Shown in pieces: positions 4,841-64,000 of a stretch of DNA of 64,000 nt. The notes beneath the pieces are model-generated. The model worked only from the letters and a program-made list of their open reading frames with translations, was not told the DNA's origin and did not search any database. The position numbers and the translations under genes are program-made. Position 1 is the first letter of the stretch; the number at the start of each line of letters is the position of its first letter. The stretch is from NCBI RefSeq assembly GCF_039654945.1, contig NW_027361856.1:3162001-3226000 (forward strand). The letters run 5' to 3'. Source of the DNA: Dendrobates tinctorius. Its lineage: Eukaryota.

Positions 4841-4944
4841 GTGAGAATGGCTGGCGAGCTGTTAAGCAAGTTACAGCACCTGTGGTTTGCACACGTAAGT
4901 TTTTCATTTTTTCAGGAATGACGGTTAGGCCTAATTCCAGAACT

Positions 4945-5425: not shown

Positions 5426-5530
5426 CAGTTAACCTGCTAGAGAGATCGTTCTTTGCTCCCAAGCATGACATCACACTCCCTAGGAAGAAGGTAATGCCAC
5501 TGTGGCGACCGTACTCCTGGGGGCGACACA

Positions 5531-10328: not shown

Positions 10329-10519
10329 ATGGTCCTGTCTGCTCTGCATTGAGGAAACGGAATGTAGGAATCTCTCTCAGCCCCAATCAACTACACCTCC
10401 ATTCGCCTCATGTGGGGACAGAACACTGCATAGGAATACTTGCAGCTGCACACACCTGTCCGGAGTGCCGGCGGCAGTGCTAGGTATTGAGGTGAGAGAC
10501 TCGCGCAAGTTTCTCGCAT

Positions 10520-22705: not shown

Positions 22706-25503
22706 ACATAGTAACATAGTTATTAAGGTTGAAGGAAGACTTTAAGTCCATCTAGTTCAACCCATATCCTATCCTAACTTGCCCTAACATGTTGATCCAG
22801 AGGAAGGCAAAAAAAACCCATGTGGCAAACAGTAAGATTCACATTGGGGAAAAAAATTCCTTCCCGACTCCACATACGGCAATCAGACTAGCTCCCTGGA
22901 TCAACGCAATATTAAGGAAACTAGTGTATATACCCTGTAATATTATACTTTTCAAGAAAGGCATCCAGTCCCTTCTTAAATTTTAGTAGGGAATCACTCA
23001 TTACAACATCATATGGCAGAGAGTTCCATAGTCTCACTGCTCTTACAGTAAAGAATCCGCGTCTGTGAGAATGCTTAAACCTTCTTTCCTCCAGACGTAG
23101 AGGATGCCCCCTTGTCCCCGTCACAGGTCTAAGAGTAAAAAGATCATTAGAAAGGTCTTTGTACTGTCCCCGCATATATTTATACATTGTAATAAGATCA
23201 CCCCTAAGCCTTTGATTTTCCAAACTAAATAACCCCAAGTGTAATAACCTGTCTTGGTATTGCAGACCCCCCAGTTCCCTAATAACCTTGGTCGCTCTTC
23301 TCTGCACCCGCTCCAATTCAGCTATGTCTTTCTTATACACCGGAGACCAGAACTGTACACAGTATTCTAAGTGTGGTCGCACTAGTGACTTATATAGAGG
23401 TAAAATTATGTTCTCCTCATGAGCATCTATGCCTCTTTTAATGCATCCCATTATTTTATTTGCCTTTGCAGCAGCTGCCTGACACTGGCCACTAAATGTG
23501 AGTTTGTCGTCCACCCATACACCCAGGTCTTTTTCAGTGACAGTTTTGCCCAGTGTTTTACAATTAAGCACATAATTATACATCTTGTTCGCTCTACCCA
23601 AGTGCATGACCTTACATTTATCCCCATTAAAGCTCATTTGCCATTTATCAGCCCAAGCTTCTAGTTTACATAAATCCTCCTGCAATATAAAATTGTCTTC
23701 CTCTGTATTGATTAGCCTGCAGAGTTTAGTGTCATCTGCAAATATTGAAATTCTACTCTCTATGCCCCCTACAAGGTCAATAATAAATATGTTAAAAAGA
23801 AGCGGGCCCAAAACTGACCACTGTGGTACCCCACTGCTAGCCGTGACCCAGTCCGAGTGTGCTCCATTAATTACCACCCTTTGTTTCCTATCCCTGAACC
23901 AGCTCTTAACCCACTTACACATATTTTCCCCTATCCCCATTGTTCTCATTTTATGTATCAACCTTTTGTGTGGCACCGTATCAAAAGCTTTTGAAAAGTC
24001 CATGTACACCACGTCACTGCATTCCCTTTGTCCAGTCCAGAAGTTACCTCTTCATAAAAGCTTATCAGACTAGTCTGACAGGAACGGTCCGTTGTAAACC
24101 CATGTTGATATTGGGTCATGAGGTTATTCTTCTCCAGATACTCCAGTATAGTATCTCTTAGAAAACCCTCCAGGATTTTACCCACAGTTGAGGTTAAACT
24201 TACTGGCCTATAATTTCAAAGTTCAGTTTTTGTCCCCTTTTTGAATATTGGCACCACATTTGCTATACGCCAGTCCTGTGGTACAGAACCTGTTATTATG
24301 GAATCTTTAAAGATTAAAAATAATGGTCTATGTTATGAATGTGTAACCGAGGAGTAAAAAAACACAACAAGCTAAGTCTCAGAAAACCAGAGAAGTTGGT
24401 AACTAAGCAGATTGCAGATCCCTGATCTTAACCGCACAACTAGCAGCAGTCGTGGAGCATTCCTATGATGGTTCTAGATGTCTCATCACAACCGGAGAAC
24501 TACATAAGCCTAAAGCAGGAAAAAAGGAAAACTAACTGCCCCAGAGCAGACCCCAAAGGAAAGACAGCCCCCCACATGTATTGACGGTGAAAAAAGATGA
24601 AAATACAAACAAAGGCAGGAAAATAGGCTGAGCAAACGATGGGGCCTGGCTAACTAAAAAGGACAGGAAAGGAAAAACACTGTCTGCCATCTGCCAAAAA
24701 GAAACCTACAAAAATATTGTCCAACACTTCAGATAGCAAAATTATCCCTGAAGTCACTAGACTTCTGAACCTATATCAGCACTCTGAAATATTCTGAGAC
24801 AGAGCAAAAAATAGGCCAATCTAATAAGGAACAAAAAGCAGAATGGCAAATACTGATTAATAGGAGTGGAAATTCAGCATAACCCCAGCAGGGGCAGACT
24901 GATTACACAAAAAACTGAATTGACCAACAAGCGCAAGTGTGAACATTAGCAAAAAACAAACTTAACTTGAGAAAACTGGAAGAGAGCTGAAGCCCAGGAC
25001 CTGAGAAGCAGACTGAATCACCAGCAACAGGATAGGGCGTCGGCTGTCTTATATCCAGTCTGATACTCCAGAGATCCAATCATTATCTTCCTCATCAGGT
25101 GGCAGATCACTACCACTTAAACCAACCGCACTACCTCCTGTCACCACCAGAGGGAGAATGAAAGGGGAACTCTCAACTGGTGAAGCAGAAAATGAGTTCA
25201 TGACAGGTCTATCTATGACTGTACTTAATTCCTGCAGTACTCGTGGGTGTATCCCATCCGGGCCCGGGTATTTGTCAATTTTAGTGATTTTTAGACGCCG
25301 CCGTACTTCCTGCTGGGTTAGGCAGGTGACATTTAATGGGATTTTATTGTGTAAATGCTGTTGAAAAAAAGTAATTTAGCATATTGGCTTTTTCCTCATC
25401 CTCATCCACCATTTCACCCAGACTATTTTTAAGGGGACAAACACTATCATTTTTTAGCTTCTTACTATTTATGTAGATAAAGAATATTTTGGGATTATTT
25501 TTA
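22706..25503 (-). mobile_element. CR1 LINE, 5'-truncated ORF2 (reverse transcriptase)
   Basis: DFSKAFDTVPH, GVPQWSVLGP, FADDTK, LYKSLVRPHLEYC; ACTATGTT-type tail at 22706. Confidence 0.93.
24331..25205. mobile_element. Solo LTR nested in CR1
   Basis: TGTTATGA...TCATGACA termini flanked by GGTCTA direct repeats. Confidence 0.78.
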
Positions 25504-26150: not shown

Positions 26151-29100
26151 CCCCTTCACTACCAAGGGTGGTTTGCACGTTAACTACCGGGCCAATTTTT
26201 ACAATTCTGACCACTGTACCTTTATGAGGTCATAACTCTGGAACGCTTCTATGGATCCCGGTGATTCTGACATTGTTTTCTCGTGACATATTGTACTTCA
26301 TGTTAGTGGTAAAATTGCATTCAAATAACTTGCGTTTATTTGTGAAAAAAACGGAAATTTGGCGAAAATTTTGAAAATTTCGCAATTTTCCAACTTTGAA
26401 TTTTTATGCCCTTAAATCACAGCGATACGGCACACAAAAAACTTAATACATAACATTTCCCACATGTTTACTTTACATCAGCACAGTTTTGGAACCAAAA
26501 TTTTTTTTTGTTAGGAAGTTATAAGGGTTAAAAATTGACCAGCGATTTCTCATTTTTGCAACACCATTTTATTTTTAGGGACCACTTCACATTTGAAGCC
26601 ACTTTGAGGGGTCTATATGATAGAAAATACCCAAAAGTGACACCATTCTAAAAACTGCACCCCTTAAGGTGCTTAAAACCACATTCAAGAAGTTTATTAA
26701 CCCTTTAGGTGCGTCACAGGAATTTTTTGAATATTAAAAAAAATGAACATTTAACTTTTTTTCACAAAAAAAATACTTCAGGTTCAATTTTCTTTATTTT
26801 ACCAAGGGTAACAGGAGAAATTGGACTGCAAGACTTATTGTGCAATTTGTCCTGAGTACGCTGATACCTGATATTTGGGGGGGAACCACTGTTTCGGCGC
26901 ATGGCAAAGCTCAGAATGGAAGGAGCGCCGTTTGACTTTTTCAATGCAAAATTGGCTGGAATTCAGATCGGACGCCATGTCACGTTTGGCGAGCCCCTGA
27001 TGTACCTAAACAGTGGAAACCCCCCCAAGTGACCCCATTTTGGAAACTAGACCCCCCAAGGAACTTATCTAGATATGTGGTGAGAACTTTGAACCCACAA
27101 GGGCTTCACAGAAGTTTATAACGTACAGCGGTACAATTAAAAAATCATATTTTTTCCACAAAAATGATCTTTTCACCCCCAATTTTTATTTTTCCAAGGG
27201 TAACAGGACCCTAAAAGTTATTGTGCAATTTGTCCTGCGTACGCTGATACCCCATATGTGGGTGTAAATGACTATTTGGGCGCATAGCAGAGCTCGGAAG
27301 GGAAGCAGCGCCATTTGACGTTTTTGGCTAGAATTGAGATCGGACACCATGTCGCGATTGGAAAACCCCTGATGTACCAAAACAGTGGAAACCCCCCACA
27401 AATGACACCATTTTGGAATCTAGACCCCCCAAGGAACTTATCTAGATGTGTGGTGAGAACTTTGAACCCCCAAGGGCTTCACAGAAGTTTATAACGTACA
27501 GCAGTACAATTAAAAAATCATATTTTTTCCACAAAAATGATCTTTTCACCCTCAATTCTTATTTTTCCAAAAGTAACAGGACCCTAAAAGATATTGTGCA
27601 ATTTATCCTGAGTACGCTGATACCCCACATGTGGGGGTAAACCACTATTTGGGCGTATGGCAGAGCTCGGAAGGGAAGCAGCGCCATTTGACGTTTTTGG
27701 CTGGAATTGAGATCAGACACCATGTCGCGTTAGGAAAGCCCCTGATGTACCAAAACAGTAGAAACCCCCCACATATGACACCATTTTGGAAACTAGACCC
27801 CCCAAGGAACTTATCTAGATGTGTGGTGAGCACTTTGAACCCCCCAGTGCTTCACTGAAGTTTATAACGTCCGGGCGTGAAAATAAAAAAATCGTATTTT
27901 TTCCACAAACATGATCTTTTAGTCCCCATTTTTTTATTTTCCCAAGGGTAACAGGAGAAATTGGACCCCAAAAGTTGTTGTCCAATTTGTCCTGAGTACG
28001 CTGTTACCTCATATGTGGGAGAAAACTACTGTATGGGCACACGTCGGGGCTCGGAAGGGAAGTAGTGACGTTTTGGAATGCAGACTTTGATGGAATGGTC
28101 TGCGGGTGTCATGTTGCGTTTGGAGAGCCCCTGATGTACCTAAATAGTGGAAACCCCCCACAAGTGACCCCATTTTGGAAACTAGACCCCCTAATGAACT
28201 TATCTAGATGTGTGGTGAGCACTTTGAACCCCCCAGTGCTTCACAGAAGTTTATAACGACCGGGCGTGAAAATAAAAATATCGTATTTTTTCAACAAACA
28301 TCATCTTTTAGTCCCCATTTTTTTTATTTTCCCAAGGGTAACAGGAGAAATTGGACCCCAAAAGTTGTTGTCCAATTTGTCCTGAGTACGCTGATACCTC
28401 ATATGTGGGAGAAAACTACTGTATGGGCACACGTCGGGGCTCGGAAGGGAAGTAGTGACGTTTTGGAATGCAGACTTTGATGGATTGGTATGCGGGTGTC
28501 ATATGCGTTTGGAGAGCCCCTAATGTACCTAAACTATTGAAACTCCCCACAAGTGACCCCATTTTGGAAACTAGACCCCCCACCGAGCTTATCTAGATGT
28601 GTGGAGAGCACTTTGAACCCCCAAGTGCTTCACAGAAGTTTATAACGCCTGGGCGTGAAAATAAAAAAAACATTTTTTTCCGCAAAATTATATTTTTGCC
28701 CCCAATTTTTTATTTTCCTAAGGGTAACAGGAGAAATTGGACCCCAAAAGTTGTTTTGTAATTTGTCCTGAGTAGGCGGATACCCTACATGTGGGGGTAA
28801 AACACTGTTTGGGCACATGGCAGAGCTTGGAAGGGAAGGAGCACCATTTGACTTTTTCAACGCAGAATTGGCTGGAATTGAGATCAGACGCCATGTTGCC
28901 TTTGGAGAGCACCTGATGTGCCCAAACAGTGGAAACCCCCAATTATAACTCCAACCCGAACCTCAACACACCGCTAANNNNNNNNNNNNNNNNNNNNNNN
29001 NNNNNNNNNNNNNNNNNNNNNNNNNNNNNNNNNNNNNNNNNNNNNNNNNNNNNNNNNNNNNNNNNNNNNNNNNNNNNNNNNNNNNNNNNNNNNNNNNNNN

Positions 29101-30571
29101 NNNNNNNNNNNNNNNATAAATACATTTTCTTTTAGTTTTATTATTTTTCCCTAACTAAGGGGGTGATAACGGGGGGTTTGATTTACGATTTATGGCGGTT
29201 TTTATGTTTGGCGGCTGTCGCACGCTAAAAGACGCTTTTTATTGTAAAAATAGTTTTTGCATCACCACATATTGTGAGCTATAATTTTTCCGTATTTTGA
29301 CCCACCGAGTCATGTGAGGTCTTATTTTTTGCGGGACGAGTTGACGTTTTTATTGGTACCATTTTCGGGCACGTGACATTTTTTGATCGCTTTTTATTCC
29401 GATTTTTGGGACGCAGAATGAACAAAAACCAGCGTTTCATGAATTTCTTTTGGGGGGGTGCGTTTACACCGTTCCGCGTGCGGTAAAATTGATAAAGCAG
29501 TTTTATTCTTCGGGTCAGTACGATTACAGCGATGCCTCATTTATGTCGTTTTTTTATGTTTTGTCGGTTTTTTGCAATGAAAACTATTTTATATAAAAAA
29601 TAATTATTTTTGTATCGCTTTATTCTGCGAGCTATAACTTTTTTATTTTTTTGCGGATGATGCTGTATGGTGGATCGTTTTTTGCGGGACAAGATGACAT
29701 TTTCAGCGGTACCATGCATATTTATATGCGTCTTTTTGATCGCACGTTATTGCACTTTTTGTTCGGTGGTATGATAATAAATCATTATTTTTTGCTTCGT
29801 TTTTTATTTTTATTTTTTAAGGGGTTCGCCAAAGGGGTTAACTAATGGGACAGTTTTATAGGGCAGGTCATTACGGACGCGGCGATACCAAATATGTGTA
29901 CTTTTATTGTTTTTGTTTTTTTTTTATTTTGAAAAAATGGATTTATTGGGGAATATTTTTTTTTTTTTACTGATTTATTTAGCGATTTTTTTTAAATTAT
30001 TTTTAACACTTTTTTTTTTTTTTTTTACTTTATTACCTTGTCCCAGGTGGGACATCGCTGTCCTGTGACAGATCGCTGATCTGTCACATCACAGATCACT
30101 GTGACAGATCAGCGATCTGTCACAGGCACTGCTGCAGACTTCCTCATGCCTGCGCTTTGCAGGCACTGAGGAAGCCAGCTTCCTCAGGCCCCCGAAGGCC
30201 CCCGTCGCCATCTTGGATCCGGGGGCCTGTAGGGAAAGAGCCCCCCGCAGCAGCGCTGCACATTGCGCTGCCGTGGGGGGCTCAGGGAAGCACGGAGGGA
30301 GCCCCCTCCCTGCCGATGCTTCCCTTTAACCCCCGGTACACCGCGATCGCGTTTGATCGCGGTGTGCAAGGGGTTAACGTGTCGGGGGCGGTCCGTGACC
30401 GCCCCTGACACATTGTGCCGGGTGTCAGCTATGATAATTAGCTGACACTCGGCCGCGATCAGCGGCGCTCACCACGTGGGCGCCGCTGATCGCGATGACG
30501 TAATATTCCGTCCATGGTAATTAGGTCCATGGTCACATGGACGGAATATTACATCAATTGTAGGTAAGGGG
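26151..30571. mobile_element. Non-autonomous TTAA-specific (piggyBac-type) element with internal 375-390-bp tandem repeats; spans an assembly gap
   Basis: TTAA-CCCCTTCACTAC ... GTAGGTAAGGGG-TTAA; internal array about 26780-28940. Confidence 0.8.
28978..29115. other. Assembly gap (N run)
   Basis: Run of n bases. Confidence 0.99.
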
Positions 30572-49291: not shown

Positions 49292-50759
49292 TTAATGATC
49301 AGGCCAATTTACAATTCTGACCACTGTCCCTTTATGAATTAATAACTCTGGAATGCTTCCATGGATCCCGGTGATTCTGAAAATGTTTTCTTACTACATA
49401 TTGTACTTCATGATAGTGGTAAAATTTCTTTGATATGACTTGTGTTTATTTGTGAAAAAAATGGAAATTTGGAGAAAATGTTGAAAATTTTGCAATTTTC
49501 CAACTTTGAATTTTCGTGCCCTTAAATCACAGAGATATGTCACAAAAAATACTTAATAATTAACATTTCCCACATGGTTAATTTACATCAGCACAATTTT
49601 GGAACCAAAATTTTTTTTCGTTAGAAAGATATAAGGGTTAAAATTTAAACAGCGATTTCTCATTTTTACAACACCATTTTTATTTTGGGACTACATCACA
49701 TTTGAAGTCACTTTGAGGAGTCTATATGATAGAAAACACCCAAAAGTGACACCAGTCTAAAAACTGAACCCCTGAATGCACTTAAAACCACATTAAAAAA
49801 GTTTATTAACCCTTTAGGTGCTTCACAGGAATTTTTGGAATGTTTTAGAAAAAATGAACATTTAACTTTTTTCACAAAAAATTTAATTCAGATCCAATTT
49901 TTTTTATTTTACCAAGGGTAACAGGAGAAATTGGACCCCAAAAGTTGTTATACAATTTGTTCTGAGTATGCTGATACCCCATATATGCAGGTAAACCACT
50001 GTTTGGGGGCATGGCAGAGCTCGGAAGGGAAGGAGCGCCTTTTCAATGCAAAATTGGCTGAAATTGAGATTGGACACCATGTCGCATTTAGAGAGCCCCC
50101 CGATGTGCCTAAACAGTGGAAACCCCCCACAAGTGACACCATTTTGGAAACTAGACCCCCTAAGGAACTTGTATAGATGTGTGGTGAGCACTTTGAACCC
50201 CTAGGTTTTTCACTAAAGTTTATAACGCCTGGGTGTGAAAATAAAAAATCATATTTTTTCCACAAACATGATTTTTAGTCCCCAATATTTTATTTTCCCA
50301 AGGGTAATAGGGGAAATTGGATGCCAAAAGTTTTTGCCCAATTTGTCCTGAGTACGCCAATACCCTATATGTGGGAGATAACCACTGTTTGGGCACACGG
50401 AAGAGCTCGGAAGGGAAGGAGCACCGTATGACTTTTTTAAACCAAAATTGGCTGGAATTGAGATCAGATGCAATGTCGCATTTGGAGAGCCCCTGATGTG
50501 CCTAAACAGTGGACACCCCCCACAATTGACCCACTGTTGGAAACTAGACCCCCTAAGGAACTTATCTAAATGTGTGGTGACCACTTTGAACCCCAAAGTG
50601 ATTCACAGAAGTTTATAACGTTGAGCCGTAAAAATAAAAAATCATATTTTTTTCACAAAAATGATCTTTTCGCCCCCAAGGAGCACATTTGACTTTTTCA
50701 ATGCAGAATTGGCTGGAATTGAGATCAGACGCCATGTGCCTAAACATTGCATACCCCCC

Positions 50760-50965: not shown

Positions 50966-52924
50966 TGGGAAAATGGAAATAAATACATTTTTTTATTTTT
51001 CCCTAACTAATGGGGTGATAAAGGGGTTTTGATTTATTATTTTTTTATTTTGATCACTGTGATAGGGCCTATCACAGTGACCAAAGTAAACCAATCGGAA
51101 AAAATCTATTGTTGCTGGGTGCCGGCTGGCAGATCTCGGCGGGCGCCCGCCATTTTATCCCAGCGACCCAGGGGACTTCAGGGGGGCTTGCAGGGACAAC
51201 GGAGGTACTGGGGGGGGTGATCGGAGGACCCTATTTCTCTCTCCCCTGATGTGCAATCACATCAGAGGAGAGAGAAATTAAATGGAAAATCAGACTTTTT
51301 TTTTGTGGTCACTGTTATACCATTAACAATGGCGATCGCAACAACGGGGTTGGTAAAAACCAACTTGAATCATGTTCTCTGGGGTCTCGGCTATGCCTGG
51401 CAACCGAGACCCTGGAGAAATTCCGACGCTGGGGGGCGCTATAACCTTAAACCTCAGCGCCATTAAAAAGCAGCGCTGTGGTTTAAGTACCCTTAATTGC
51501 CACTGCTAAAAGGCATATCGACGGTCATAAAGAGGTTAAAATGTAACTCTCATCATTCTCCCCTGCTCGCGCCAATCGCCGGCAGAGCAGAGGAGAATGA
51601 CGAGAGCCGTGTTCAGCACCTGGCGCTGGGGAACAGTGCTTACTGCAACGCTTCTTCACTGGTGCCGTACATGATGCGGCACACACATGCCACATGTGTG
51701 CCACAAGCATTACACACACGGACACTGACATCTCCGATACCAGAAATATATATCAGGACATGTGAAAGAGGCATTACAGCGGGTTTTTATGTTTGGCAGC
51801 TGTCAGATGCTAAAAGATGCTTTTTATTGCAAAAAATAGTTTTTGCATCACCATATTTTGAGAGCTATAATTTTTCCATATTTTGGCCCACAGAGTCATG
51901 TGAGGTCTTGTTTCTTGTGGGACGAGCTGACATTTTTATTGGTATAATTTTCAGGCACATGACATTTTTTGATCGCTTTCTATTCCAATTTTTGGGAGAC
52001 AAAATGAGCAAAAACCAACAATTGATGAATTTCTTATATTTTGGGGGGGGCGTTTACACCGTTCCACGTGTGGTAAAATTGATAAGGCAGTTTTATTCTT
52101 CGCATCAGTTCGATTACAGCGATACCTCATTTATATATTTTTTTAATGTTTTGGCGCTTTTGTATAATAAAAACTATTTTATAGAAAAAATAATTGTTTT
52201 TGCATCAATTTACTCTGACAGCTATAGCTTTTATATTTTTTCGCTGATGATGCTGAATGACGGATCGTTTTTTTGCGGGACAAGATGTTATCAGCGGTAC
52301 CATGTTTATTTATATCCGTATTTTTTACCGGGTGTTATTCCACTTTTTGTTTGGTGGTATGATGTGTGAGGTAGCGCTGTCATGTAAGTAGGGGGTTCTC
52401 GCTTGCAGCGATCAAAAAAACACATCCGGCACCGGATTTTCAACAAATCATAGTCCAAGAGGTTTATTCATCCTTCATAAACCTCCAGCAGTAATATGCA
52501 ACAGTCTTATAGCAGACAGCAGGGTATCTTCACACTGGAGCTTTGCTCCCCTATAGCCCTCTAGTCACACAGGCTGTGCTTCATCTAGCCAGCAGGCTAT
52601 ACAGTCTCTCAGTTGTAGTCCTGTCTCCGGGTTACCTTGCATGCTGCTTTACACTGCTAACGTTCCTTCCCTCTCCCTGGGAACGGTCAGGCACACATCG
52701 CCATTAGTCACAGCGTCCACACGTGCTGTTAGTGAGGAGATCCTTCTCCTCACGGGACCTTCCAAACTGGACCAATCAGGTCCCAGCATTCACCCCCATG
52801 TGACCAGACCTCAGGTACCTTTTATGGTCTATAACCACACCCACAAGTGATCACATGACTATGACCTCACCCAAGGTCCTATTGCACACAGGCTTCCCTG
52901 ACACATTGTAACGGAACGTACTAC

Positions 52925-54616
52925 TCAGCAGTACCTCTGCTGATCATTATGATCGTTCAGTATCCTACACCTATCAGGGTAATGGAAATGCTTATACGGT
53001 TGTCCTGGGACACCCACACAGCGCCCCCTAGCGGACACAGCGATCACTGCACCACATACCTCCCCCCTATGTTCAAACCTGTGGGGTTGAACACACAGCA
53101 TAACCCCCAGCTCTCGAGACTGGGCACTCACTACACCTTGCCCACCAGGTCGAGAGAACCGTCTCCATTTGTCAAACGGCCTCATCTCTACGTTAGGCCT
53201 CCCCCGCTCCCAGCGGTCATAATACCGGTCATTGTCTTTGACCCTCCAGTCACGGTTTGTCTGCGTCATCAGACACTCTCTAGTCTCCACCTGTCTGCAG
53301 TACGCTTCGTCACCTGATCTTTCTCTCACTGACCGTCTCTCTCGGTTGGTGCGGTCATAAGTCTTAGTAGAGCCTGCTGTCTGGTCTGAGTCTGACTCAG
53401 TCAGCGACTCACAGGAACTATGGTCTTTCAACGTCATCCTGCCAGTCGAACTACCCCTTGCTGACACTCTTCTGCCACCTGCCATGTCACTTCTTGGAGG
53501 AACCGTTCGGGTCCTTACATTTTGGGTTGGAGGCGGCCGCCACCTGGTATTCTGCATTTCTTTATTAATTCGCCGACGGTCCAGCCTCAACTGCTCAATT
53601 TCTTGCAGGTACTCCACTCGATACTCCACGAGCATCCGAAAGTCTCTCAGGCTTTCCACGGAGCCAACCACCATGATGGAAATCCTATCCACTTCCCTGG
53701 ATACATGGTCTTCATCATCAGGAGGGATCCTCACCCTCACCACACCGGAGATATTCACAAGGTCTTGCATTACCTTCCCGGACCTTCCAATGATTCTCCC
53801 AATCAGAGTTTTGGGTACCAGAACCACATCTTTCCTCAAACCCAACCGATCCATAGCCTCTCTTGCTATCTCTAGGCGTCGAGCAGCCTTCATATTACTC
53901 TGCCTAACCAATTGTTTGACACGTAGACACTGCAAATGCATCTCCTTCAGGACAGCTACTCTGTTTGATGTATCTTCCCTGGCTGATACTATCACCAACT
54001 GCCGAGTCTCAGGTGCCCAGTGCACCTCACACGCTTTGACCGCCTCTTTGAAAGCCTCATGTACCCCTTCATCCGCGCAGGCTTCTTGCATGTCTTGGGG
54101 TACCTCGATCACAGATTTGAAGGTCGTGGTCTTGCTCTCTTCCTGGACAGAAGACTCTGGCTTTACCACGGACACTTCCCTCACTACAGTTGACCCGACT
54201 GGGTGACTGTCTTCTTCGGCTCTTTGCTCACCAACTTCAGGAGATTTTATCTCTTCGCGAGCCTTTGCCAAGATAGGTACCGGCAGGTCCGTCTTGTTAT
54301 CACTCGGACCCAGCTGCTGCACATCTCCGTCCAAGATCTTCTCCCGCAGAAGACCTTCTACTACTCCTCTGAGTTCCTCCATCTCTTCCTTAAGGCTCTT
54401 GTTCACACTTTGCCAGGTGGACAGGTGACCTCTGAGCTCCAAGACATCTTTCTTGAGCCCCTCCACCTTGTGCTCGGCCAATTGTCTCAAGATTCTCTCT
54501 TGTTTGACATGTTCTTCCACTGTCTCTTTTATTAGTTGTATCTCCTGATCTTGTTCTCTTTTGGCCAGCACATGTCGCACCACTAATTCTTTAACTATAT
54601 CGTCAAAGGGTACCAC
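52925..54616 (-). CDS. FXR1-derived KH-domain ORF (coiled coil + KH0 + KH2 + NES + C-terminal motifs); track start is GTG
   Basis: IEVPQDMQEACADEGVHEAFKEAV, VPKTLIGRIIGRSGKVMQDLVNISGVVRVRI, YLQEIEQLRLDR and TESDSDQTA..TNRERRS parallel FXR1 motifs; intronless. Confidence 0.85.
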   Translation of the reverse strand: MVPFDDIVKELVVRHVLAKREQDQEIQLIKETVEEHVKQERILRQLAEHKVEGLKKDVLELRGHLSTWQSVNKSLKEEMEELRGVVEGLLREKILDGDVQQLGPSDNKTDLPVPILAKAREEIKSPEVGEQRAEEDSHPVGSTVVREVSVVKPESSVQEESKTTTFKSVIEVPQDMQEACADEGVHEAFKEAVKACEVHWAPETRQLVIVSAREDTSNRVAVLKEMHLQCLRVKQLVRQSNMKAARRLEIAREAMDRLGLRKDVVLVPKTLIGRIIGRSGKVMQDLVNISGVVRVRIPPDDEDHVSREVDRISIMVVGSVESLRDFRMLVEYRVEYLQEIEQLRLDRRRINKEMQNTRWRPPPTQNVRTRTVPPRSDMAGGRRVSARGSSTGRMTLKDHSSCESLTESDSDQTAGSTKTYDRTNRERRSVRERSGDEAYCRQVETRECLMTQTNRDWRVKDNDRYYDRWERGRPNVEMRPFDKWRRFSRPGGQGVVSAQSRELGVMLCVQPHRFEHRGEVCGAVIAVSARGRCVGVPGQPYKHFHYPDRCRILNDHNDQQRYC

Positions 54617-55548
54617 TGAGTCAGTCCTATCAGTCGAGTGAACCCCCGATTACCCTCTGACTGTGCTTCTATTCCCGTTATCCTCTCGATCAGGTTACCA
54701 CCAGTCCTGTCACGAGTTTCAGTCAGCACAGCATTAGATTCTGTCCTTGTGGTGGCTACTGGCAACAACACATCACAGTCACACCACATCGTACGGTGAA
54801 CCCCCAAGACACTCTCTATCCGTGTGACAGCTCCGCTCTTTTCGTTTACCACACCATTCTCATTCACACTGTGGTACCCTTCAGGTGACGTCAGGTCAGT
54901 AAATTCGTCTGACGCAATTCTTTCTCCGGTCACCCTTACGTCTAGCCTGTCCACGTTAGGAGGTGTCAGCGTCTCAGTGTCTGCTAGCACTACCGTAGAA
55001 ACGTCTCTATCGTCCTGCCCCACATCTTTAAATATGACACGGCGCCTCTCAAAGGTATGCACTAGGTTTGGTGGCGTACTACCACCTTGGCACTCCCCCT
55101 TCGTCTTCTCATTTAGGACTCTGTCCACCTTATAATTCACGATGACCCTGTGGAGGCAGCGAACTCTGACGTTTTTCTCGGTCAGAGCTAAACCGAGCGG
55201 AGTTCCTGTCAGAGTCACCTGACTCTTTGAGTCCAGCCAACCAGGGACTCCTTCCCGATGCAGCATCACAGTACACACCTGCGGCCCATCATCACTATCC
55301 GGAAAGGATATCCCACATTCTGACCAAGTCATACACACACACTGCGGTACTCCAGACATACCCACTGAGCCATCCAGTGCTGTCATTTCTTCAAACTTGG
55401 CCCCTTTCTGGACCACCACCCCACTATGGGTTGCCGGCCCCTCCCAGGACTCCACCCCTTTTTGGGTTACCGCGCCCTTTTGGGACTCCACCCGCTTTTG
55501 GGCTACCACCCCAATTTGGGTCACCGCCCCCTTTCTGGATTTCCCCAT
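54595..55548 (-). CDS. Upstream ORF with N-terminal repeats and a degenerate retroviral-type protease segment (317 aa)
   Basis: ATG in strong Kozak context (GACATGG); QKGAVT/QKGVES repeats; PQVCTV..GWLDSKSQVTL..VRCLH resembles a Gypsy LLDSGS protease. Confidence 0.55.
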   Translation of the reverse strand: MGKSRKGAVTQIGVVAQKRVESQKGAVTQKGVESWEGPATHSGVVVQKGAKFEEMTALDGSVGMSGVPQCVCMTWSECGISFPDSDDGPQVCTVMLHREGVPGWLDSKSQVTLTGTPLGLALTEKNVRVRCLHRVIVNYKVDRVLNEKTKGECQGGSTPPNLVHTFERRRVIFKDVGQDDRDVSTVVLADTETLTPPNVDRLDVRVTGERIASDEFTDLTSPEGYHSVNENGVVNEKSGAVTRIESVLGVHRTMWCDCDVLLPVATTRTESNAVLTETRDRTGGNLIERITGIEAQSEGNRGFTRLIGLTQWYPLTI

Positions 55549-57501
55549 GTCCGTTCTGCAGAACTTCTTATGCCACAGTTCACACACTACAGTTTATGTA
55601 TTTTTTTTTTTTACGATACCACACAAGTCTTTGTTGGCACCACCACAGCTCCTGCTGTCACCGATCACCGGCTGCTGTTCACGCACACACAGCGGCTGGT
55701 GTCACTGCAGCTCCTGCTGCGCCGTCTTCGTGGACGCGCCGATCCACCCGAAGCCGCTTGTCTCCTTCGTAACCCCGCCGGGTTACCGGAAGCCGCTTGT
55801 CAACCTCGAAGATAAAAGAAACCACAAAAGCTCGCCCATAGGGCCTTTCCAGTGCGCAGGTATAATGGGTATAAAGAAATAATACAGGGTACTCACCCTT
55901 AATAGTTGTGTAAAGCCACAACTACTGTATCCGCTTAGTCACATGCAATAAAGCTGCAGCAAGATGGTGTAGACAGACAGCGTCTGCTACCAATGGTCAA
56001 AGAGGAGATCCCAAAAAAGGAAAAACACCAGGTCCCTGTGCTGTGAGACGTTCGTGACCCCACTGAGCCACAGCAAGCACCTTCAGGTTTTTTTGCAGAG
56101 GAAAAAGAAAAAACACATGCACGAAAAAACTCCAAAAAACTCACGTATACTGTCTGTGCGCTATTCAGGATGTACCGTCTCCGCCTGAGACCGTCCAACA
56201 CACAGGGCACACCGGGTGCTATTCAGGGAGCCGACCCTCCTCCCAGGGTCTCCCAACACACCGGCTTCACCAGGTCCAAGGTCGTATCACGTGTTCCAGG
56301 GATCCGATTCCTCTCCCAGAACCTCCCAACACTGACCCTCCAGGACCTTGCTCACTGACCCAGGTCAGTACAACAACGAACACCTGTCCGTTACCTGTGT
56401 CGGCCACACAGGTCGTCGGGTACCTCTTATCCGCAGAGGCACCCTAGCAATCACCAGTCTCTTTCACTGAGCTGCTGTCAGTATACGGCTTCCACAACAG
56501 TCAGTCCTCCTGGCTCAGCGTTGCCAGCACTGCAACATGTGCTGTTGGAACCGCAGCCCTTAGCAACAACGTTTTTTTTTTTTTCTTGGCAGTCCTTTTC
56601 TGTTGCCCCCAGCAACAAGGCTACTATATTGCCCTTAGCAACTCTCCACCATTTGTGAGGTAGCGCTGTCATGTAAGTAGGGGGTTCTCGCTTGCAGCGA
56701 TCAAAAAAACACATCCGGCACCGGATTTTCAACAAATCATAGTCCAAGAGGTTTATTCATCCTTCATAAACCTCCAGCAGTAATATGCATCAGTCTTATA
56801 GCAGACAGCAGGGTATCTTCACACTGGAGCTCTGCTCCCCTATAGCCCTCCTAGTCACACAGGCTGTGCTTCATCTAGCCAGCAGGCTATACAGTCTCTC
56901 AGTAGCAGTCCCGTCTCCGGGTTACCTTGCATGCTGCTTTACACTGCTAACGTTCCTTCCTTCTCCCTGGGAACGGTCAGGCACACATCGCCATTAGTCA
57001 CAGCGTCCACACGTGCTGTTAGTGAGGAAATCCTTCTCCTCACGGGACATTCACCCCATGTGACCAGACCTCAGGTACCTTATATGGTCCATAACCACAC
57101 CCACAGGTGATCACATGACTATGACCTCACCCAAGGTCCTATTGCACACAGCCACACACAGGCTTTCCTGACACATTGTAACGGAACGTACTACTCAGCA
57201 GTACCTCTGCTGATCATTATGATCTTTCAGTATCCTACACCTATCAGGGTAATGGAAATGCTTATACGGTTGTCCTGGGACACCCACACAGCGCCCCCTA
57301 GCGGACACAGCGGTCACTGCACCACAGATGATAAAGCATTGTTTTTTGCCTTGTTTTTACTTTATGGTGTTCACTAAAGGGGTTAACTAGTAGTTCATAT
57401 AATGGAGCCCAATGACAGATTAAAACACAAATGAAAGAATAGATATATACACATAGAATACATATATATACTGTATATATATATATACACATGTCATTGA
57501 G

Positions 57502-60739: not shown

Positions 60740-63700
60740 ACTGTACCTTTATGAGGTCATAACTCTGGAACGCTTCCATGGATCCCGGTGATTCTGACAT
60801 TGTTTTCTCATGACATATTGTACTTCATGTTAGTGGTAAAATTTCATTCAAATAACTTGCGTTTATTTGTGAGAAAAACGGAAATTTGGCGAAAATTTTG
60901 AAAATTTTGCAATTTTCCAACTTTGAATTTTTATGCCCTTAAATCACAGAGATACAGCACAAAAAAAACTTGATAACTAACATTTCCCACATGTTTACTT
61001 TACATCAGCACAATTTTGGAACCAAAATTTTTTTTTGTTAGGAAGTTATAAGGGTTAAAAGTTGACTAGCGATTTCTCATTTTTACAACACCATTTTATT
61101 TTTAGGACCACATCACATTTGAGGTCACTTTGAGGGGTCTATATGATAGAAAATACCCAAAAGTGACACCATTCTAAAAACTGCACCCCTTAAGGTGCTC
61201 AAAACCACATTCAAGAAGTTTATTAACCCTTTAGGTGCGTCACAGGAATTTTTTTGAATATTTAAAAAAAAAAATGAACATCTAACTTTTTTTCACAAAA
61301 AAAATACTTCAGGTTCAATTTTTTTTATTTTACCAAGGGTAACAGGAGAAATTGGACTGCAAAAGTTATTGTGCAATTTGTCCTGAGTACGCTGATACCT
61401 GTTATGTGGGGGGAACGACTGTTTCGGCGCATGGCAGAGCTCAGAATGGAAGGAGCGCCGTTTGACTTTTTCAATGCAAAATTGGCTGGAATTCAGATCG
61501 GACACCATGTCACGTTTGGAGAGTCCCTGATGTACCTAAACAGTGGAAACCCCCTAAAAGTGACCCCATTTTGGAAACTAGGCCCCCCAAGGAACTTATC
61601 TAGATATGTGGTGAGAACTTTGAACCCACAAGGGCTTTACAGAAGTTTATAACGTACAGCAGTACAATTAAAAAATCATATTTTTTCCACAAAAATGATC
61701 TTTTCACCCCAATTTTTATTTTCTCAAGGGTAACAGGACCCTAAAAGTTATTGTGCAATTTGTCCTGAGTACGCTGATGCCCCACATGTGGGGGTAAACC
61801 ACTATTTGGGCGCATGGCAGAGCTTGGAAGGGAAGCAGCGCCATTTGACGTTTTTGGCTGGAATTGAGATCGGACATCATGTCGCGATTGGAAAACCCCT
61901 GATGTACCAAAACAGTGGAAACCCCCCACAAATGACACCATTTTGGAAACTAGACCCCCTAAGGAACTTATCTAGATGTGTGGTGAGAACGTTGAACCCC
62001 CAAGGGCTTCACAGAAGTTTATAACATAAAGCTGTACAATTAAAAAATCATATTTTTTTTCCACGAAAATGATCTTTTCACCCTCAATTCTTATTTTTCC
62101 AAGGGTAACAGGACCCTAAAAGTTATTGTGCAATTTGTCCTGAGTACGCTGATACCCCACATGTGGGGGTAAACCACTATTTGGGCGCATGGCAGAGCTC
62201 GGAAGGGAAGCAGCACCATTTGACGTTTTTGGCTGGAATTGAGATCGGACACCATGTCACGATTGGAAAACCCCTGATGTACCTAAACAGTGGAAACCCC
62301 CCACAAATGACACCATTTTGTAAACTAGACCCCCCAAGGAACTTATCTAGATGTGTGGTGAGCACTTTGAACCCCCCAGTGCTTCACAGAAGTTTATAAC
62401 GCCCGGGCGTGAAAATAAAAAATTTGTATTTTTTCCACAAACATGATCTTTTAGTCACCATTTTTTTATTTTCCCAAGGGTACCAGGAGAAATTGGACCC
62501 CAAAAGTTGTTGTCCAATTTGTCCTGAGTATGCTGATACCCCATATGTGGGAGAAAACTACTGTATGGGCACACGTCGGGGCTCGGAAGGGAAGTAGGGA
62601 CGTTTTGGAATGCAGACTTTGATGGAATGGTCTGCGGGTGTCATGTTGCCTTTGGAGAGCCCCTAATGTACCTAAACAGTGGAAACCCCCCACAAATGAC
62701 CCCATTTTGAAAACTAGACCCCCTAAGGAACTTATCTAGATGTGAGGTGAGCACTTTGAACCCTCAAAGGCTTCACAGAAGTTTATAATGCCATGGCATG
62801 AAAATAAAAAAATCGTATTTTTTCCACAAACATGATCAATTAGTCGCCAATTTTTTTATTTTCCCAAGGGTAACAGGAGAAATTGAACCCCAAAAGTTGT
62901 TGTCCAATTTGTCCTGAGTACGCTGACACCCCATATGTGGGAGAAAACTACTGTATGGGCACACGTCGGGGCTCGGAAGGGAAGTAGTGACGTTTTGGAA
63001 TGCAGACTTTGAGGGAATGTTCTGCGGGTGTCATGTTGCCTTTGGAGAGCCCCTAATGTACCTAAACAGTGGAAACCCCCCACAAATGACCCCATTTTGG
63101 AAACAAGACCCCCTAAGGAACTTATCTAGATGTGTGGTGAGCACTTTGAACCCCCAAGGGCTTCACAGAAGTTTATAATGCCCGGGCATGAAAATAAAAA
63201 AATCGTATTTTTTCCACAAACATGATCAATTAGTCCCCAATTTTTTCATTTTCCCAAGGGTAACAGGAGAAATTGGACCCCAAAAGTTGTTGTCCAATTT
63301 GTCCTGAGTACGCTGACACCCCATATGTGGGAGAAAACTACTGTATGGACACACGTCAGGGCTCGGAAGGGAAGTAGTGACGTTTTGGAATGCAGACTTT
63401 GATGGAATGGTCTGCGGGTGTCATGTTGCCTTTGGAGAGCCCCTAATGTACCTAAACAGTGGAAACCCCCACAAATGACCCCATTTTGGAAACGAGACCC
63501 CCTAAGGAACTTATCTAGATGTGTGGTGAGCACTTTCAACCCCCAAGGGCTTCACAGAAGTTTATAATGCCCGGGCATGAAAATAAAAAAATTGTATTTT
63601 TTCCGCAAACATGATCAATTAGTCCCCAATTTTTTCATTTTCCCAAGGGTAACAGGAGAAATTGGACCCCAAAAGTTGTTGTCCAATTTGTCATGAGTAC

Positions 63701-64000
63701 GCTGACACCCCATATGTGGGAGAAAACTACTGTATGGACACACGTCAGGGCTCGGAAGGGAAGTAGTGACGTTTTGGAATGCAGACTTTGATGGAATGGT
63801 CTGCGGGTGTCATGTTGCCTTTGGAGAGCCCCTAATGTACCTAAACAGTGGAAACCCCCACAAATGACCCCATTTTGGAAAAGAGACCCCCTAAGGAACT
63901 TATCTAGATGTGTGGTGAGCACTTTGAACCCCCAAGGGCTTCAAAGAAGTTTATAATGCCCGGGCATGAAAATAAAAAAATTGTATTTTTTCCACAAACA
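60740..64000. repeat. piggyBac-type element body with 375-390-bp tandem array, running off the window end
   Basis: Near-identical to 26211-28900; at least 7 units. Confidence 0.88.

What the first reader, a model, noticed from the sequence alone, without database searches (positions are those of the whole stretch)
52365..57326. Young LTR retroelement that has captured host FXR1 in place of pol
Seen: a complete insertion with GATG TSD, two LTRs differing by only scattered substitutions and small indels, a tRNA-Ala-like primer-binding site and a purine tract. It has no RT, RNase H or integrase. Its internal region holds a 563-codon open frame whose aa ~163-440 align by eye to FXR1. Known: FMR1/FXR proteins are KH-domain translational regulators. 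C-terminal motifs (GRRVSARG..LKD, TESDSDQTA, TNRERRS..DEA versus FXR1 RSVSGGRG..LKD, TESDQTA, TNRRRRS..DEDA) point to FXR1 rather than FMR1 or FXR2. Inference: the protein is far diverged from FXR1 yet still open, while the LTRs are young. This suggests an old capture maintained by selection in a still-mobilised family, i.e. a retroelement-borne RNA-binding protein.
Basis: partly seen in the sequence, partly recalled or inferred. Interest (0 to 1): 0.92.

Follow-up and report, generated by a model that had tools for sequence, protein, structure and literature searches.

The report
Frog LTR element carrying captured FXR1
A 5-kb mobile element in a poison-frog genome has no replication enzymes of its own. 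It carries a stolen piece of the host RNA-binding gene FXR1 that its family has kept under selection across several frog genera, and a related tree-frog element carries the sister gene FMR1 instead.

Summary
Window 52365-57326 is a complete, pol-less LTR element on the minus strand. It has 673/692-bp LTRs, a GATG target-site duplication, TG..CA ends, a PBS-like TGGTGGAGAG and a purine tract.

Its 563-codon frame holds an intron-less FXR1 fragment: KH0 (Pfam 5e-15), KH2, and traces of the C-terminal core. The Agenet domains, KH1 and the RGG region are missing. This copy is damaged. A frameshift near 54650 splits what is one fused ORF of 837-928 codons in intact relatives.

The family is multi-copy in Dendrobates tinctorius, Ranitomeya imitator, R. 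variabilis and Anomaloglossus baeobatrachus. Eight of the ten relatives examined showed an LTR pair, 95-100% identical. Four of these have a clean 4-bp duplication of their own.

All the element-borne modules form one clade (100/99) nested inside frog FXR1. Codon models give omega of about 0.33 on KH0+KH2 (2dlnL 119), against 0.6-1.1 elsewhere in the ORF.

One relative carries a MYH9 tail where the FXR1 module sits. A related Hyla sarda element carries an FMR1-type module, and the AU test rejects a shared origin (p 0.003).

What the protein does is inferred. My best guess is a self-binding RNP or packaging protein. I found no helper element and no publication describing this.

The parts
52361..52364 (.). 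Target-site duplication GATG, left copy
   Evidence: Read directly. The same 4 bases follow the other LTR at 57327-57330.
52365..53056 (-). 3' LTR in the element's sense (692 bp), starting TGTG and ending CACA. AATAAA lies on the minus strand at 52463-52468.
   Evidence: Direct repeats 97-99% identical in ungapped blocks. 15 substitutions and 3 indels against the other LTR. AATAAA position.
53057..53069 (-). Polypurine tract (..AGGGGGGAGGTA) abutting the 3' LTR
   Evidence: Read directly. The same motif sits at the same junction in L001, L002, L004-L007 and in Hyla L009.
52925..54649 (-). ORF2. The frame is open from 54649, the first start codon is at 54616, and the stop is at 52925-52927. It runs coiled-coil, KH0, KH2, remnant of the FXR1 C-terminus, then an LTR-encoded tail.
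   Evidence: Homologues P0001-P0007 at 47-77% identity.
54167..54616 (-). Predicted coiled-coil / linker segment of ORF2 (aa 1-150), origin unknown
   Evidence: Conserved in relatives. Omega 0.69. Only weak coiled-coil Pfam noise.
53177..54130 (-). FXR1-derived segment (ORF2 aa about 163-480), intron-less, lacking KH1 and the RGG region
   Evidence: Pfam and PDB hits. Alignment with host FXR1 P0292 and P0306. Tree.
53879..54133 (-). KH0 domain
   Evidence: Pfam KH_9 at 5.1e-15. The AF2 model overlays FMRP KH0 (4QVZ) at rmsd 1.3 A over 77 residues with 43% identity. Omega 0.31.
53606..53827 (-). KH2 domain with an intact GxxG loop (G-R-S-G)
   Evidence: Pfam KH_1 at 6.4e-07. 2QND KH2 aligns to aa 251-337. 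G277 and G280 are invariant across family and host. Omega 0.36.
52928..53056 (-). Last roughly 43 codons of ORF2, encoded by the U3 end of the 3' LTR
   Evidence: The same peptide is read from the 5' LTR. P0001 and P0002 end the same way.
54598..54649 (-). Overlap of the two frames. This is where the copy is frameshifted relative to intact relatives.
   Evidence: Three-frame translation. P0002 and L001 read through the homologous stretch in one frame.
54595..55548 (-). ORF1 from its ATG (55548-55546). It holds N-terminal 6-aa/18-nt repeats (about 55401-55546), then a conserved backbone domain of about 110 aa and a spacer.
   Evidence: It matches the N-termini of P0002 and P0008 at 57-61% identity. 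Omega 0.66.
55549..56633 (-). Untranslated leader of about 1.1 kb, the presumed site of a packaging signal
   Evidence: No ORF with a Pfam hit. 80-83% identical to the L001 leader. The packaging role is an inference.
56634..56651 (-). Primer-binding-site-like sequence TGGTGGAGAGTTGC.., two bases from the 5' LTR
   Evidence: Read directly. TGGTGGAGA is shared by L002, L004, L007 and Hyla L009. tRNA identity not tested.
56654..57326 (-). 5' LTR in the element's sense (673 bp). On the minus strand, TATAAG lies at 57079-57084 and AATAAA at 56752-56757.
57327..57330 (.). Target-site duplication GATG, right copy
   Evidence: Read directly.

Best explanation
SHOWN. The window holds one slightly decayed copy of a non-autonomous LTR retroelement family of dendrobatoid frogs. 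Its layout is LTR, PBS, a 1.1-kb leader, one long ORF, PPT, LTR. In intact members the ORF fuses four parts:
- an element-specific N-terminal module (short repeats plus a conserved domain of about 110 aa);
- a coiled-coil stretch;
- a processed, intron-less piece of host FXR1 running from KH0 to near the C-terminus;
- a tail that reads into the 3' LTR.

The FXR1 piece was captured once, from a frog FXR1 mRNA, before Aromobatidae and Dendrobatidae split. It then lost KH1 and the RGG region in Dendrobatidae. It has evolved far faster than the host gene. Even so, KH0 and KH2 have stayed under purifying selection and the KH2 GxxG RNA-binding loop has been kept. Lineages recombine, and copies have kept inserting until very recently.

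INFERRED. The element has no RT or integrase, so it must be copied by a helper element that I could not find. Selection on a protein carried by a parasite of a parasite makes most sense if the protein acts mainly on the RNA that encodes it. I therefore propose that the coiled-coil-plus-KH protein multimerises on its own transcript, as LINE-1 ORF1p does with a coiled coil plus an RRM. This would stabilise that RNA or deliver it into the helper's particles or into FXR-type granules, taking the place of a Gag/NC RNA-binding function.
For: Structure of the element.

No pol.

FXR1 identity:
- Pfam KH_9 5.1e-15 and KH_1 6.4e-07.
- PDB FMRP hits.
- AF2 model with mean pLDDT 82, matching FMRP KH0 at 1.3 A and KH1-KH2.

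Single origin inside frog FXR1: the element clade has support 100/99, within anuran FXR1 at 99/97.

Processed origin: L008 is colinear with host FXR1 residues 126-567, E 2e-121.

Family and mobility:
- L001, L002, L004-L008 and L010 each have an LTR pair, K = 0-0.037.
- Clean 4-bp duplications: GTAC (L002), ATAT (L004), ATAC (L006), GCAC (L007).
- Single uninterrupted ORFs of 928, 837 and 919 codons in L001, L004 and L005.

Selection:
- GY+F3X4 gives omega 0.31 for KH0 (2dlnL 53), 0.36 for KH2 (55.6) and 0.33 for both together (119).
- The rest of the ORF gives 0.66 (N-terminal module), 0.69 (coiled coil), 0.62 (tail) and 1.07 (disordered FXR C-region).
- Pairwise NG86 omega is 0.12-0.25 on KH0 for distant pairs.
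- GxxG glycines are invariant.
- The closest pair, W-L002, shows omega of about 1.2 on KH2. That fits neutral decay after insertion.

Recombination: L001 and L006 differ by dS 0.08 in the 5' module but dS 1.06 in KH2, and the gene trees conflict.

Context from the literature:
- Several RNA viruses recruit host FXR proteins to build replication condensates (PMC4980055, PMC11001562).
- L1 ORF1p complexes contain FXR1, FXR2 and FMR1 (PMC10289378).
Against: The function is not demonstrated. There are no expression, binding or mobilisation data.

No Gag or NC homology is supported. The Gag_p30 hit (E 2.6e-4, below Pfam's cut-off) occurs only in the window copy and in none of the other six N-terminal sequences scanned from five relatives.

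The helper element was not found.

The copy with identical LTRs (L006) has a frameshift inside KH0. So a copy with a broken ORF may have been mobilised in trans. Alternatively the break is post-insertional or an assembly error.

Loci were found through annotated proteins, which enriches for long open frames.

Omega of 0.3 is moderate, not strong, constraint.

Only seven elements entered the codon models, and recombination violates the single-tree assumption.
Confidence: 0.55

Rival explanations
1. Counter-defence or decoy. The truncated FXR1 keeps KH0 (which in FMRP-family proteins overlaps the homo- and heteromerisation region) and KH2, but lacks the Agenet and RGG parts. It could pair with host FXR1, FXR2 or FMRP, or compete for their RNA targets. 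That would blunt a host pathway that silences or sequesters retroelement RNA, or redirect translation in germ cells.
For: The domain losses are selective. Agenet was never captured. KH1 and RGG were deleted later. KH0 and KH2 stayed constrained. The coiled-coil and KH0 region is retained in every copy. FXR-family proteins are found in L1 RNP bodies (PMC10289378) and are targeted by viral proteins (PMC10897489, PMC4980055).
Against: A trans-acting decoy would benefit every element in the cell, including broken copies and competitors. Selection on each copy's ORF should then be weak, yet omega is 0.33. The module is only 31-40% identical to host FXR1, so pairing with the host protein is not assured. 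No interaction data exist.
Confidence: 0.2
2. An endogenised, replication-defective retrovirus of the acute-transforming type. The element-host fusion protein would spread horizontally with a helper virus, and the FXR1 part would act on the infected cell's growth or translation. It would not act on the element's own RNA.
For: The layout resembles gag-onc viruses: a 5' element-derived part fused in frame to host cDNA, no pol or env, and a frame that runs into the 3' LTR. A sibling copy carries a MYH9 tail instead, so host cDNA has been captured more than once. In the KH trees a D. tinctorius copy (L006) groups with Ranitomeya copies.
Against: No gag, env or retroviral protease homology could be confirmed. 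All copies seen are germline insertions, with several per genome in four species. That pattern fits intragenomic retrotransposition. The cross-species grouping is equally explained by old sub-lineages plus recombination.
Confidence: 0.12
3. Neutral passenger. An FXR1 retrocopy landed in an LTR element and is carried along without function. The open frames are chance survivals in young copies.
For: The window copy, L002, L006, L007 and L008 all carry frameshifts or stops. Non-autonomous LTR elements need no coding capacity.
Against: Omega = 1 is rejected for KH0 and for KH2 (2dlnL 53 and 55.6). The adjacent disordered segment of the same ORF is neutral (omega 1.07). The GxxG loop is invariant across copies that differ at dS above 1. 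ORFs of 837-928 codons (1363 in Hyla) stay open in copies from different genera.
Confidence: 0.05
4. Domesticated host genes: a small FXR1-like gene family that merely sits between LTR-like repeats.
For: NCBI annotates the ORFs as host genes, with names such as 'RNA-binding protein FXR1-like', 'restin homolog' and 'uncharacterized protein'.
Against: The eight copies with an LTR pair also have a PPT at the 3' LTR junction, and most have a readable PBS and TSD. The copies lie at unrelated loci. LTR pairs are up to 100% identical. Many copies are broken.
Confidence: 0.03

Closest known systems
Acute transforming retroviruses with element-host fusion proteins, e.g. gag-abl and gag-myc types (from established knowledge, not tested here)
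   Same: Replication-defective LTR element. Spliced host cDNA is fused in frame behind a 5' element-derived coding part. Pol is missing. It depends on a helper. Host cDNA has been captured repeatedly in one backbone (FXR1, MYH9).
   Different: This element is germline-resident and multi-copy in several genera. The insert is an RNA-binding protein, not a growth-signalling gene. The insert has been kept under purifying selection over a long period, where transforming viruses arise and die within single hosts. Gag homology was not confirmed.
Host-derived accessory genes of complex retroviruses, e.g. the retroviral cyclin of walleye dermal sarcoma virus, an epsilonretrovirus (established knowledge)
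   Same: A host-derived gene is retained by selection within a retroelement lineage of lower vertebrates, and is far diverged from its cellular parent.
   Different: Those viruses keep gag, pol and env and add the host gene. Here the host gene is the main coding content of an element without pol.
Non-autonomous LTR elements mobilised in trans, e.g. mouse ETn by MusD, and plant LARD/TRIM (established knowledge)
   Same: LTRs, PBS and PPT are kept while RT and IN are absent. The family is young and multi-copy.
   Different: Those elements have no conserved ORF. This family maintains a long ORF with constrained domains.
Gene capture by plant LTR retrotransposons, e.g. maize Bs1 (established knowledge)
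   Same: Processed host gene fragments sit inside an LTR retrotransposon and are read as a fusion ORF.
   Different: Plant captures are mostly single or low-copy and evolve neutrally. Here the capture defines a family spread over a frog superfamily, and a relative carries the paralogue.
LINE-1 ORF1p (functional analogy only)
   Same: A coiled-coil followed by an RNA-binding domain, encoded by a retroelement and needed in cis. FXR proteins co-purify with ORF1p (PMC10289378).
   Different: There is no sequence relationship. ORF1p uses an RRM plus CTD. The analogy is my inference.
Host FXR1
   Same: KH0 and KH2 folds, the GxxG loop, the helix after KH2, and traces of the C-terminal core.
   Different: No Agenet/Tudor domains, no KH1, no RGG region. 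31-40% identity, whereas host FXR1 is 93-99% identical among frogs. No introns. It is fused to element-derived sequence.

Membership tests
LTR retroelement (structural definition) | Two long direct terminal repeats with TG..CA ends | tested here: met
   52365-53056 and 56654-57326. 15 substitutions and 3 indels.
LTR retroelement (structural definition) | Short target-site duplication made by an integrase | tested here: met
   GATG on both sides. Relatives have clean 4-bp duplications of their own: GTAC, ATAT, ATAC, GCAC, and ATGC in Hyla L009.
LTR retroelement (structural definition) | PBS next to the 5' LTR and a polypurine tract next to the 3' LTR | tested here: met
   TGGTGGAGAG.. at 56634-56651 and the purine tract at 53057-53069. 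Which tRNA primes was not testable.
Autonomous LTR retrotransposon / retrovirus | Encodes reverse transcriptase, RNase H and integrase | tested here: not met
   No such Pfam domain in any ORF of at least 80 aa on either strand. The interior is only 3.6 kb.
Autonomous LTR retrotransposon / retrovirus | Recognisable Gag (CA/NC) and protease | tested here: inconclusive
   Gag_p30 at E 2.6e-4, below the cut-off, in the window copy only. The D-S-G .. I-I-G-R-D motifs in Ranitomeya copies look protease-like by eye. They got no Pfam hit, no PDB profile hit, and an AF2 model at pLDDT 39.
FMR1/FXR protein family | KH0 domain | tested here: met
   PF17904 at 5.1e-15. The model overlays 4QVZ KH0 at 1.3 A.
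FMR1/FXR protein family | Tandem Agenet/Tudor domains at the N-terminus | tested here: not met
   Absent. Homology starts at host residue about 125.
FMR1/FXR protein family | Both KH1 and KH2 type-I KH domains with GxxG loops | tested here: not met
   KH2 is present with G-R-S-G. KH1 is deleted (60 host residues) in all Dendrobates and Ranitomeya copies. KH1 is present but has lost GxxG in the Anomaloglossus copies.
FMR1/FXR protein family | C-terminal core (PF12235) and RGG region | tested here: inconclusive
   PF12235 scores E 4.5 in the window copy, 2.9e-07 in P0005 and 7.3e-17 in L008. The RGG stretch is absent from the Dendrobates and Ranitomeya copies.
FXR1 orthology (versus FXR2 or FMR1) | Groups with FXR1 in a family tree | tested here: met
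   Nested in anuran FXR1 (99/97). FXR2 and FMR1 form separate clades.
LINE-mediated processed retrocopy | Poly(A) tail and a long (7-20 bp) TSD directly flanking the host-derived cDNA | tested here: not met
   The FXR1 segment is fused in frame to element sequence on both sides, with no poly(A).
LARD/TRIM-type non-coding non-autonomous LTR elements | No conserved open reading frame | tested here: not met
   The long ORF is conserved with omega 0.33 on the KH domains.

The most novel reading that the evidence does not exclude
A lineage of small LTR elements in hyloid frogs has taken an RNA-binding module from the host FMR1 family at least twice: FXR1 in Dendrobatoidea and FMR1 in Hyla. It uses that module, behind a coiled coil, as its own structural, cis-acting RNP protein in place of Gag/NC. 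This would be an LTR-element counterpart of LINE-1 ORF1p, built from a host translational regulator. It would also be a case where a helper-dependent 'parasite of a parasite' is held together by selection on a stolen host gene.
Probability: 0.3. Interest if true: 0.9.

Novelty: new variant of a known kind. Interest (0 to 1): 0.8.

Why it matters
Capture of host genes by retroviruses and LTR retrotransposons is well known. The captures are usually short-lived (oncogenes) or neutral (plant chimeras). Here the captured gene defines a whole element family. It has been kept under purifying selection while the host superfamily diversified. It has also been pruned to two KH domains. A related backbone in tree frogs carries the paralogue FMR1, and a sibling copy carries a MYH9 tail.

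That makes three questions testable:
- Can a non-autonomous retroelement be selected for a protein of its own?
- What do FMR1-family KH0/KH2 domains offer to retroelement RNA? RNA viruses and L1 recruit the same host proteins.
- How often is host cDNA swapped into one backbone?

There is also a practical point. NCBI gene models in these frogs list the ORFs as host genes, under names such as 'FXR1-like', 'restin homolog', 'myosin-9-like' and 'Rad50 ATPase'. That will mislead gene-family and expression studies.

Tried and rejected
Helper element. A word-indexed protein search with the backbone part of P0008 (residues 60-700) returned only family members. No tool here searches frog genomes by DNA.

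Retroviral protease idea for the conserved backbone domain. Pfam at E up to 10 gave nothing. A profile search of the PDB gave nothing relevant. The AF2 model on an 8-sequence alignment had pLDDT 39 and was unusable, so I ran no fold search on it.

Gag. The Gag_p30 hit is confined to the window copy. I treat it as chance.

PBS identity. No tRNA genes in the window or in loci L001-L011 to compare with.

Rfam on the element. Only sub-threshold microsatellite-type hits outside it.

Literature. Four searches and one full-text check of the D. tinctorius genome paper found nothing on FXR1 or FMR1 inside retroelements.

Tree. The site-heterogeneous 'careful' tree did not finish in two runs. Its quick version and a finished LG+G4 bootstrap tree agree on the relevant nodes.

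L011 (P0122). No LTR pair was resolved, because a tandem array swamped the self-comparison.

L003 (MYH9 copy). Only the 3' LTR was found.

L005. The 3' LTR end was not resolved, so no duplication could be read there.

Rejected ideas: a chance ORF, a LINE-type retrocopy, a segmental duplicate, and a domesticated gene. See the rival explanations.

Full report
**What is in the window**

Positions 52365-57326 hold a complete LTR element of 4962 bp. Two direct repeats, 52365-53056 and 56654-57326, start TGTG and end CACA. GATG flanks them on both sides. Aligned with gaps, the LTRs differ by 15 substitutions and 3 indel events over 662 bases, K = 0.023.

All long frames run on the minus strand, so 56654-57326 is the 5' LTR. 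Two bases inside it lies TGGTGGAGAG.., the complement of a tRNA 3' end. A purine run (..AGGGGGGAGGTA) abuts the 3' LTR. Each LTR carries AATAAA on the sense strand. No other copy of the LTR or of the interior occurs in the window.

The interior is 3.6 kb. It holds a leader of about 1.1 kb, a 332-codon frame (55593 to 54598, ATG at 55548) and a 574-codon frame (54649 to 52928).

Pfam finds no reverse transcriptase, RNase H, integrase or envelope in any ORF of at least 80 aa on either strand.

**The FXR1 homology is real**

- ORF2 matches the FMRP KH0 domain (PF17904, 5.1e-15, aa 162-246) and a type-I KH domain (PF00013, 6.4e-07, aa 264-321).
- Against the PDB it aligns to FMRP residues 121-214 and to KH2 of the KH1-KH2 crystal structure.
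- An AlphaFold model of aa 150-400, built on a 22-sequence alignment, has mean pLDDT 82, with most of residues 13-215 above 90. It shows two KH folds joined by a long helix.
- Foldseek puts FMRP KH1-KH2 (2QND) and FMRP KH0 (4QVZ, rmsd 1.3 A, 43% identity) at the top.
- The Agenet domains are absent. About 60 host residues, making up KH1, are missing. The RGG-rich stretch is missing.
- The last roughly 43 codons are encoded by the 3' LTR itself.

**This copy is one damaged member of a family**

The closest database proteins (47-77% identity) are 'uncharacterized', 'FXR1-like' or 'restin homolog' models from Dendrobates tinctorius, Ranitomeya imitator and R. variabilis. An exhaustive HMMER search added more from these species, plus two from Anomaloglossus baeobatrachus.

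I fetched the DNA around ten of these proteins.
- Seven are encoded by a single uninterrupted stretch. Three gene models do not translate straight from the DNA (L005, L008, L010).
- Eight sit between an LTR pair.
- LTR divergence K is 0.009 (L001), 0.024 (L002), 0.005 (L004), 0.003 (L005), 0 (L006), 0.037 (L007) and 0.009 (L008). L010's pair is 97.2% identical.
- The 4-bp duplications differ between loci: GTAC, ATAT, ATAC and GCAC. L001's flanks match at only 3 of 4 bases, and L005's could not be read.
- For L003 only the 3' LTR was found. For L011 no pair could be resolved.

These are independent, mostly recent integrations.

In L001, L004 and L005 the whole coding region is one open frame of 928, 837 and 919 codons. 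P0002 reads without interruption through the stretch where the window copy changes frame, near 54650. So the window copy has a frameshift that splits the family's fusion ORF. L002, L006, L007 and L008 also carry one or more breaks.

**Layout of the family protein**

1. An N-terminal run of 6-residue (18-nt) repeats.
2. A conserved backbone domain of about 110 aa. In Ranitomeya copies it carries D-S-G and I-I-G-R-D motifs that look protease-like by eye. In the window copy these motifs are degenerate.
3. A spacer.
4. A predicted coiled coil.
5. The FXR1-derived part.
6. A short tail into the LTR.

I could not confirm the protease reading. Pfam, a PDB profile search and a low-confidence AlphaFold model all gave nothing. 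The weak Gag_p30 hit is limited to the window copy. The class of the backbone therefore stays open, and the helper that must supply RT and integrase was not found.

**Origin of the captured module**

The Anomaloglossus element (L008) is the least reduced. Its module is colinear with that species' own FXR1 from residue 126 to 567. Identity is 50%, E is 2e-121, and there are no introns. It still contains KH1 and the RGG region, though the KH1 GxxG loop is already lost.

I built a bootstrap tree (LG+G4, 297 columns) of 13 element-borne modules, 15 host FXR1, and FXR2, FMR1 and invertebrate outgroups.
- All dendrobatoid element modules form one clade (100/99).
- That clade nests within anuran FXR1 (99/97). 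It is unresolved among hyloid host FXR1, including Dendrobates and Anomaloglossus (88/92).
- The branch leading to the element clade is tens of times longer than the host FXR1 branches.
- The window ORF groups with three D. tinctorius copies (100/100). The window probably comes from that species or a close relative.

My reading is a single capture of a spliced frog FXR1 mRNA before Aromobatidae and Dendrobatidae split. From general knowledge that split is tens of millions of years old, which I did not test here. KH1 and RGG were deleted later in the dendrobatid lineages.

**Selection**

I anchored codons of seven elements to the window protein with tblastn, then fitted GY+F3X4 models.

| Segment | omega | 2dlnL against omega = 1 |
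|---|---|---|
| KH0 | 0.31 | 53 |
| KH2 | 0.36 | 55.6 |
| KH0 + KH2 | 0.33 | 119 |
| N-terminal module | 0.66 | 9.6 |
| Coiled coil | 0.69 | 5.3 |
| Tail | 0.62 | 5.35 |
| Disordered FXR C-region | 1.07 | 0.06 |

- Pairwise Nei-Gojobori values agree. KH0 gives 0.12-0.25 for distant pairs.
- The two GxxG glycines of KH2 are invariant across the family and host proteins.
- The closest pair of copies shows omega of about 1.2 on KH2. That is expected if copies drift once inserted.
- The constraint therefore acted in the replicating lineages.

Caveats: there are only seven sequences, the loci were found through annotated ORFs, and the lineages recombine.

Recombination is evident. L001 and L006 differ by dS 0.08 in the 5' module but by 1.06 in KH2. 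The 5' and KH gene trees also conflict.

**Further captures in the same backbone**

MYH9. A D. tinctorius locus (L003, protein P0087, named 'myosin-9-like') has the family's 5' modules and 3' tail. Where the FXR1 module sits, it carries about 250 residues of the non-muscle myosin IIA tail. The evidence is Pfam Myosin_tail_1 at 9.3e-75 and best PDB match Myosin-9 residues about 1669-1940 at 1.4e-89.

FMR1 in Hyla. In Hyla sarda a 5272-bp element (L009:4176-9447) has these features:
- identical 577-bp blocks at the two ends, with the LTR proper ending two bases earlier;
- TSD ATGC;
- the same TGGTGGAG.. PBS start and the same PPT-LTR junction as the dendrobatoid family;
- one 1363-codon frame made of two copies of the backbone domain, about 400 residues of coiled coil, and a KH0-KH1-KH2 module that reads into the LTR.

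Its backbone domain is homologous to the Anomaloglossus one (BLASTP 4e-08, hhalign probability 84%). Its KH module, however, is of FMR1 type. It groups with FMR1 (100/99 and 97/89). Forcing it together with the dendrobatoid modules costs 42 log-likelihood units (AU p 0.003).

A second Hyla copy, 97% identical over 4.4 kb, lies 170 Mb away on the same chromosome.

Related backbones thus carry paralogous host modules. This happened either by two captures or by replacement of one module by the other.

**How it most likely works**

Shown:
- The element is non-autonomous and has been mobilised recently and repeatedly.
- It expresses, or at least encodes, one fusion protein.
- The KH0 and KH2 parts of that protein have been under purifying selection.

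Inferred:
- It is copied by an unidentified helper.
- Selection on the ORF of a helper-dependent element is easiest to explain if the protein acts preferentially on its own RNA.
- A coiled coil followed by KH domains suggests a multimeric RNA-coating protein, analogous to LINE-1 ORF1p. Such a protein could stabilise the transcript or take it into the helper's particles or into FXR-type granules.

Support is circumstantial. RNA viruses recruit host FXR proteins to assemble replication condensates (PMC4980055, PMC11001562, PMC10897489). FXR1, FXR2 and FMR1 co-purify with L1 ORF1p (PMC10289378).

I put about 0.95 on the structural and evolutionary description and about 0.35 on this mechanism. The main rivals are a decoy of host FXR proteins and a helper-dependent endogenised retrovirus of the transforming type. 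A neutral passenger and a domesticated host gene are poorly compatible with the data.

**Comparison with what is known**

The element works like a replication-defective retrovirus with an element-host fusion gene, and like a trans-mobilised LTR element such as ETn. It differs from both. The host-derived gene is conserved family-wide, is an RNA-binding protein, and has been acquired from two paralogues.

As a protein it is FXR1-derived, but it fails the family's domain definition: no Agenet, no KH1 and no RGG.

I found no paper describing it. The D. tinctorius genome paper reports young ERV1 insertions but nothing on FXR1.

**Limits**

- Copy number, expression, the helper element and the priming tRNA could not be addressed with the tools at hand.
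- The age estimate depends on an assumed substitution rate.
- The N run at 28978-29115 was left untouched.
- Nothing in the window looked human.

Noticed in passing
L009:4176-9447 and L012:~6055-11409 (Hyla sarda, GCA_029499605.1 CM056039.1): A related 5.3-kb LTR element carries an FMR1-type (not FXR1-type) KH0-KH1-KH2 module behind two backbone domains and a coiled coil of about 400 aa, all in one 1363-codon frame. L009 has identical LTRs and TSD ATGC. The L012 copy is 97% identical. NCBI models splice these ORFs to distant exons and name them 'uncharacterized' and 'Rad50 ATPase'.
   Followed up: partly
L003:~3700-8088 (D. tinctorius, JAYMGB010000310.1): A family member in which a MYH9 (non-muscle myosin IIA) tail fragment of about 250 aa occupies the place of the FXR1 module. 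It is annotated 'myosin-9-like' and lies within the span of a SERAC1-like gene model. Only the 3' LTR was found.
   Followed up: partly
L008:7857-7859 (Anomaloglossus baeobatrachus): The 405-codon and 702-codon frames of this element are in the same phase and are separated by a single stop codon. This is either a point mutation or a read-through arrangement. I did not examine it further.
   Followed up: no
window 49902-50679 and 61320-64000: Arrays of a tandem repeat of about 390 bp (2 and 7 copies, 82-89% matches) lie on both sides of the element. The insertion sits in a repeat-rich stretch.
   Followed up: partly
window 771-3155 (+): A 794-aa ORF with a BED zinc finger and a hAT dimerisation domain: a hAT transposase.
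   Followed up: partly
window 6533-9611 (+): BEL/Pao-type retrotransposon remains (DUF1759 gag-like and Peptidase_A17).
   Followed up: partly
window 22921-24012 (-): A 363-aa ORF with a reverse-transcriptase domain (RVT_1, 7e-22), unrelated to the element under study.
   Followed up: no
window 28978-29115: A run of 138 N (assembly gap or mask). Left as it is.
   Followed up: no
L001 and L006 (D. tinctorius): These copies use a different PBS start (TGGTGACAGACTGCGGGC) from the window, L002, L004 and L007 (TGGTGGAGA..). The family therefore uses at least two primer sites.
   Followed up: no
L001:11830-14688: A long array of a 42-bp tandem repeat (over 60 copies) lies downstream of that element. 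It is unrelated to the finding.
   Followed up: no
Public annotation: RefSeq models in four frog species name these retroelement ORFs as host genes: 'RNA-binding protein FXR1-like', 'fxr1-B-like', 'restin homolog', 'myosin-9-like' and 'Rad50 ATPase'.
   Followed up: yes
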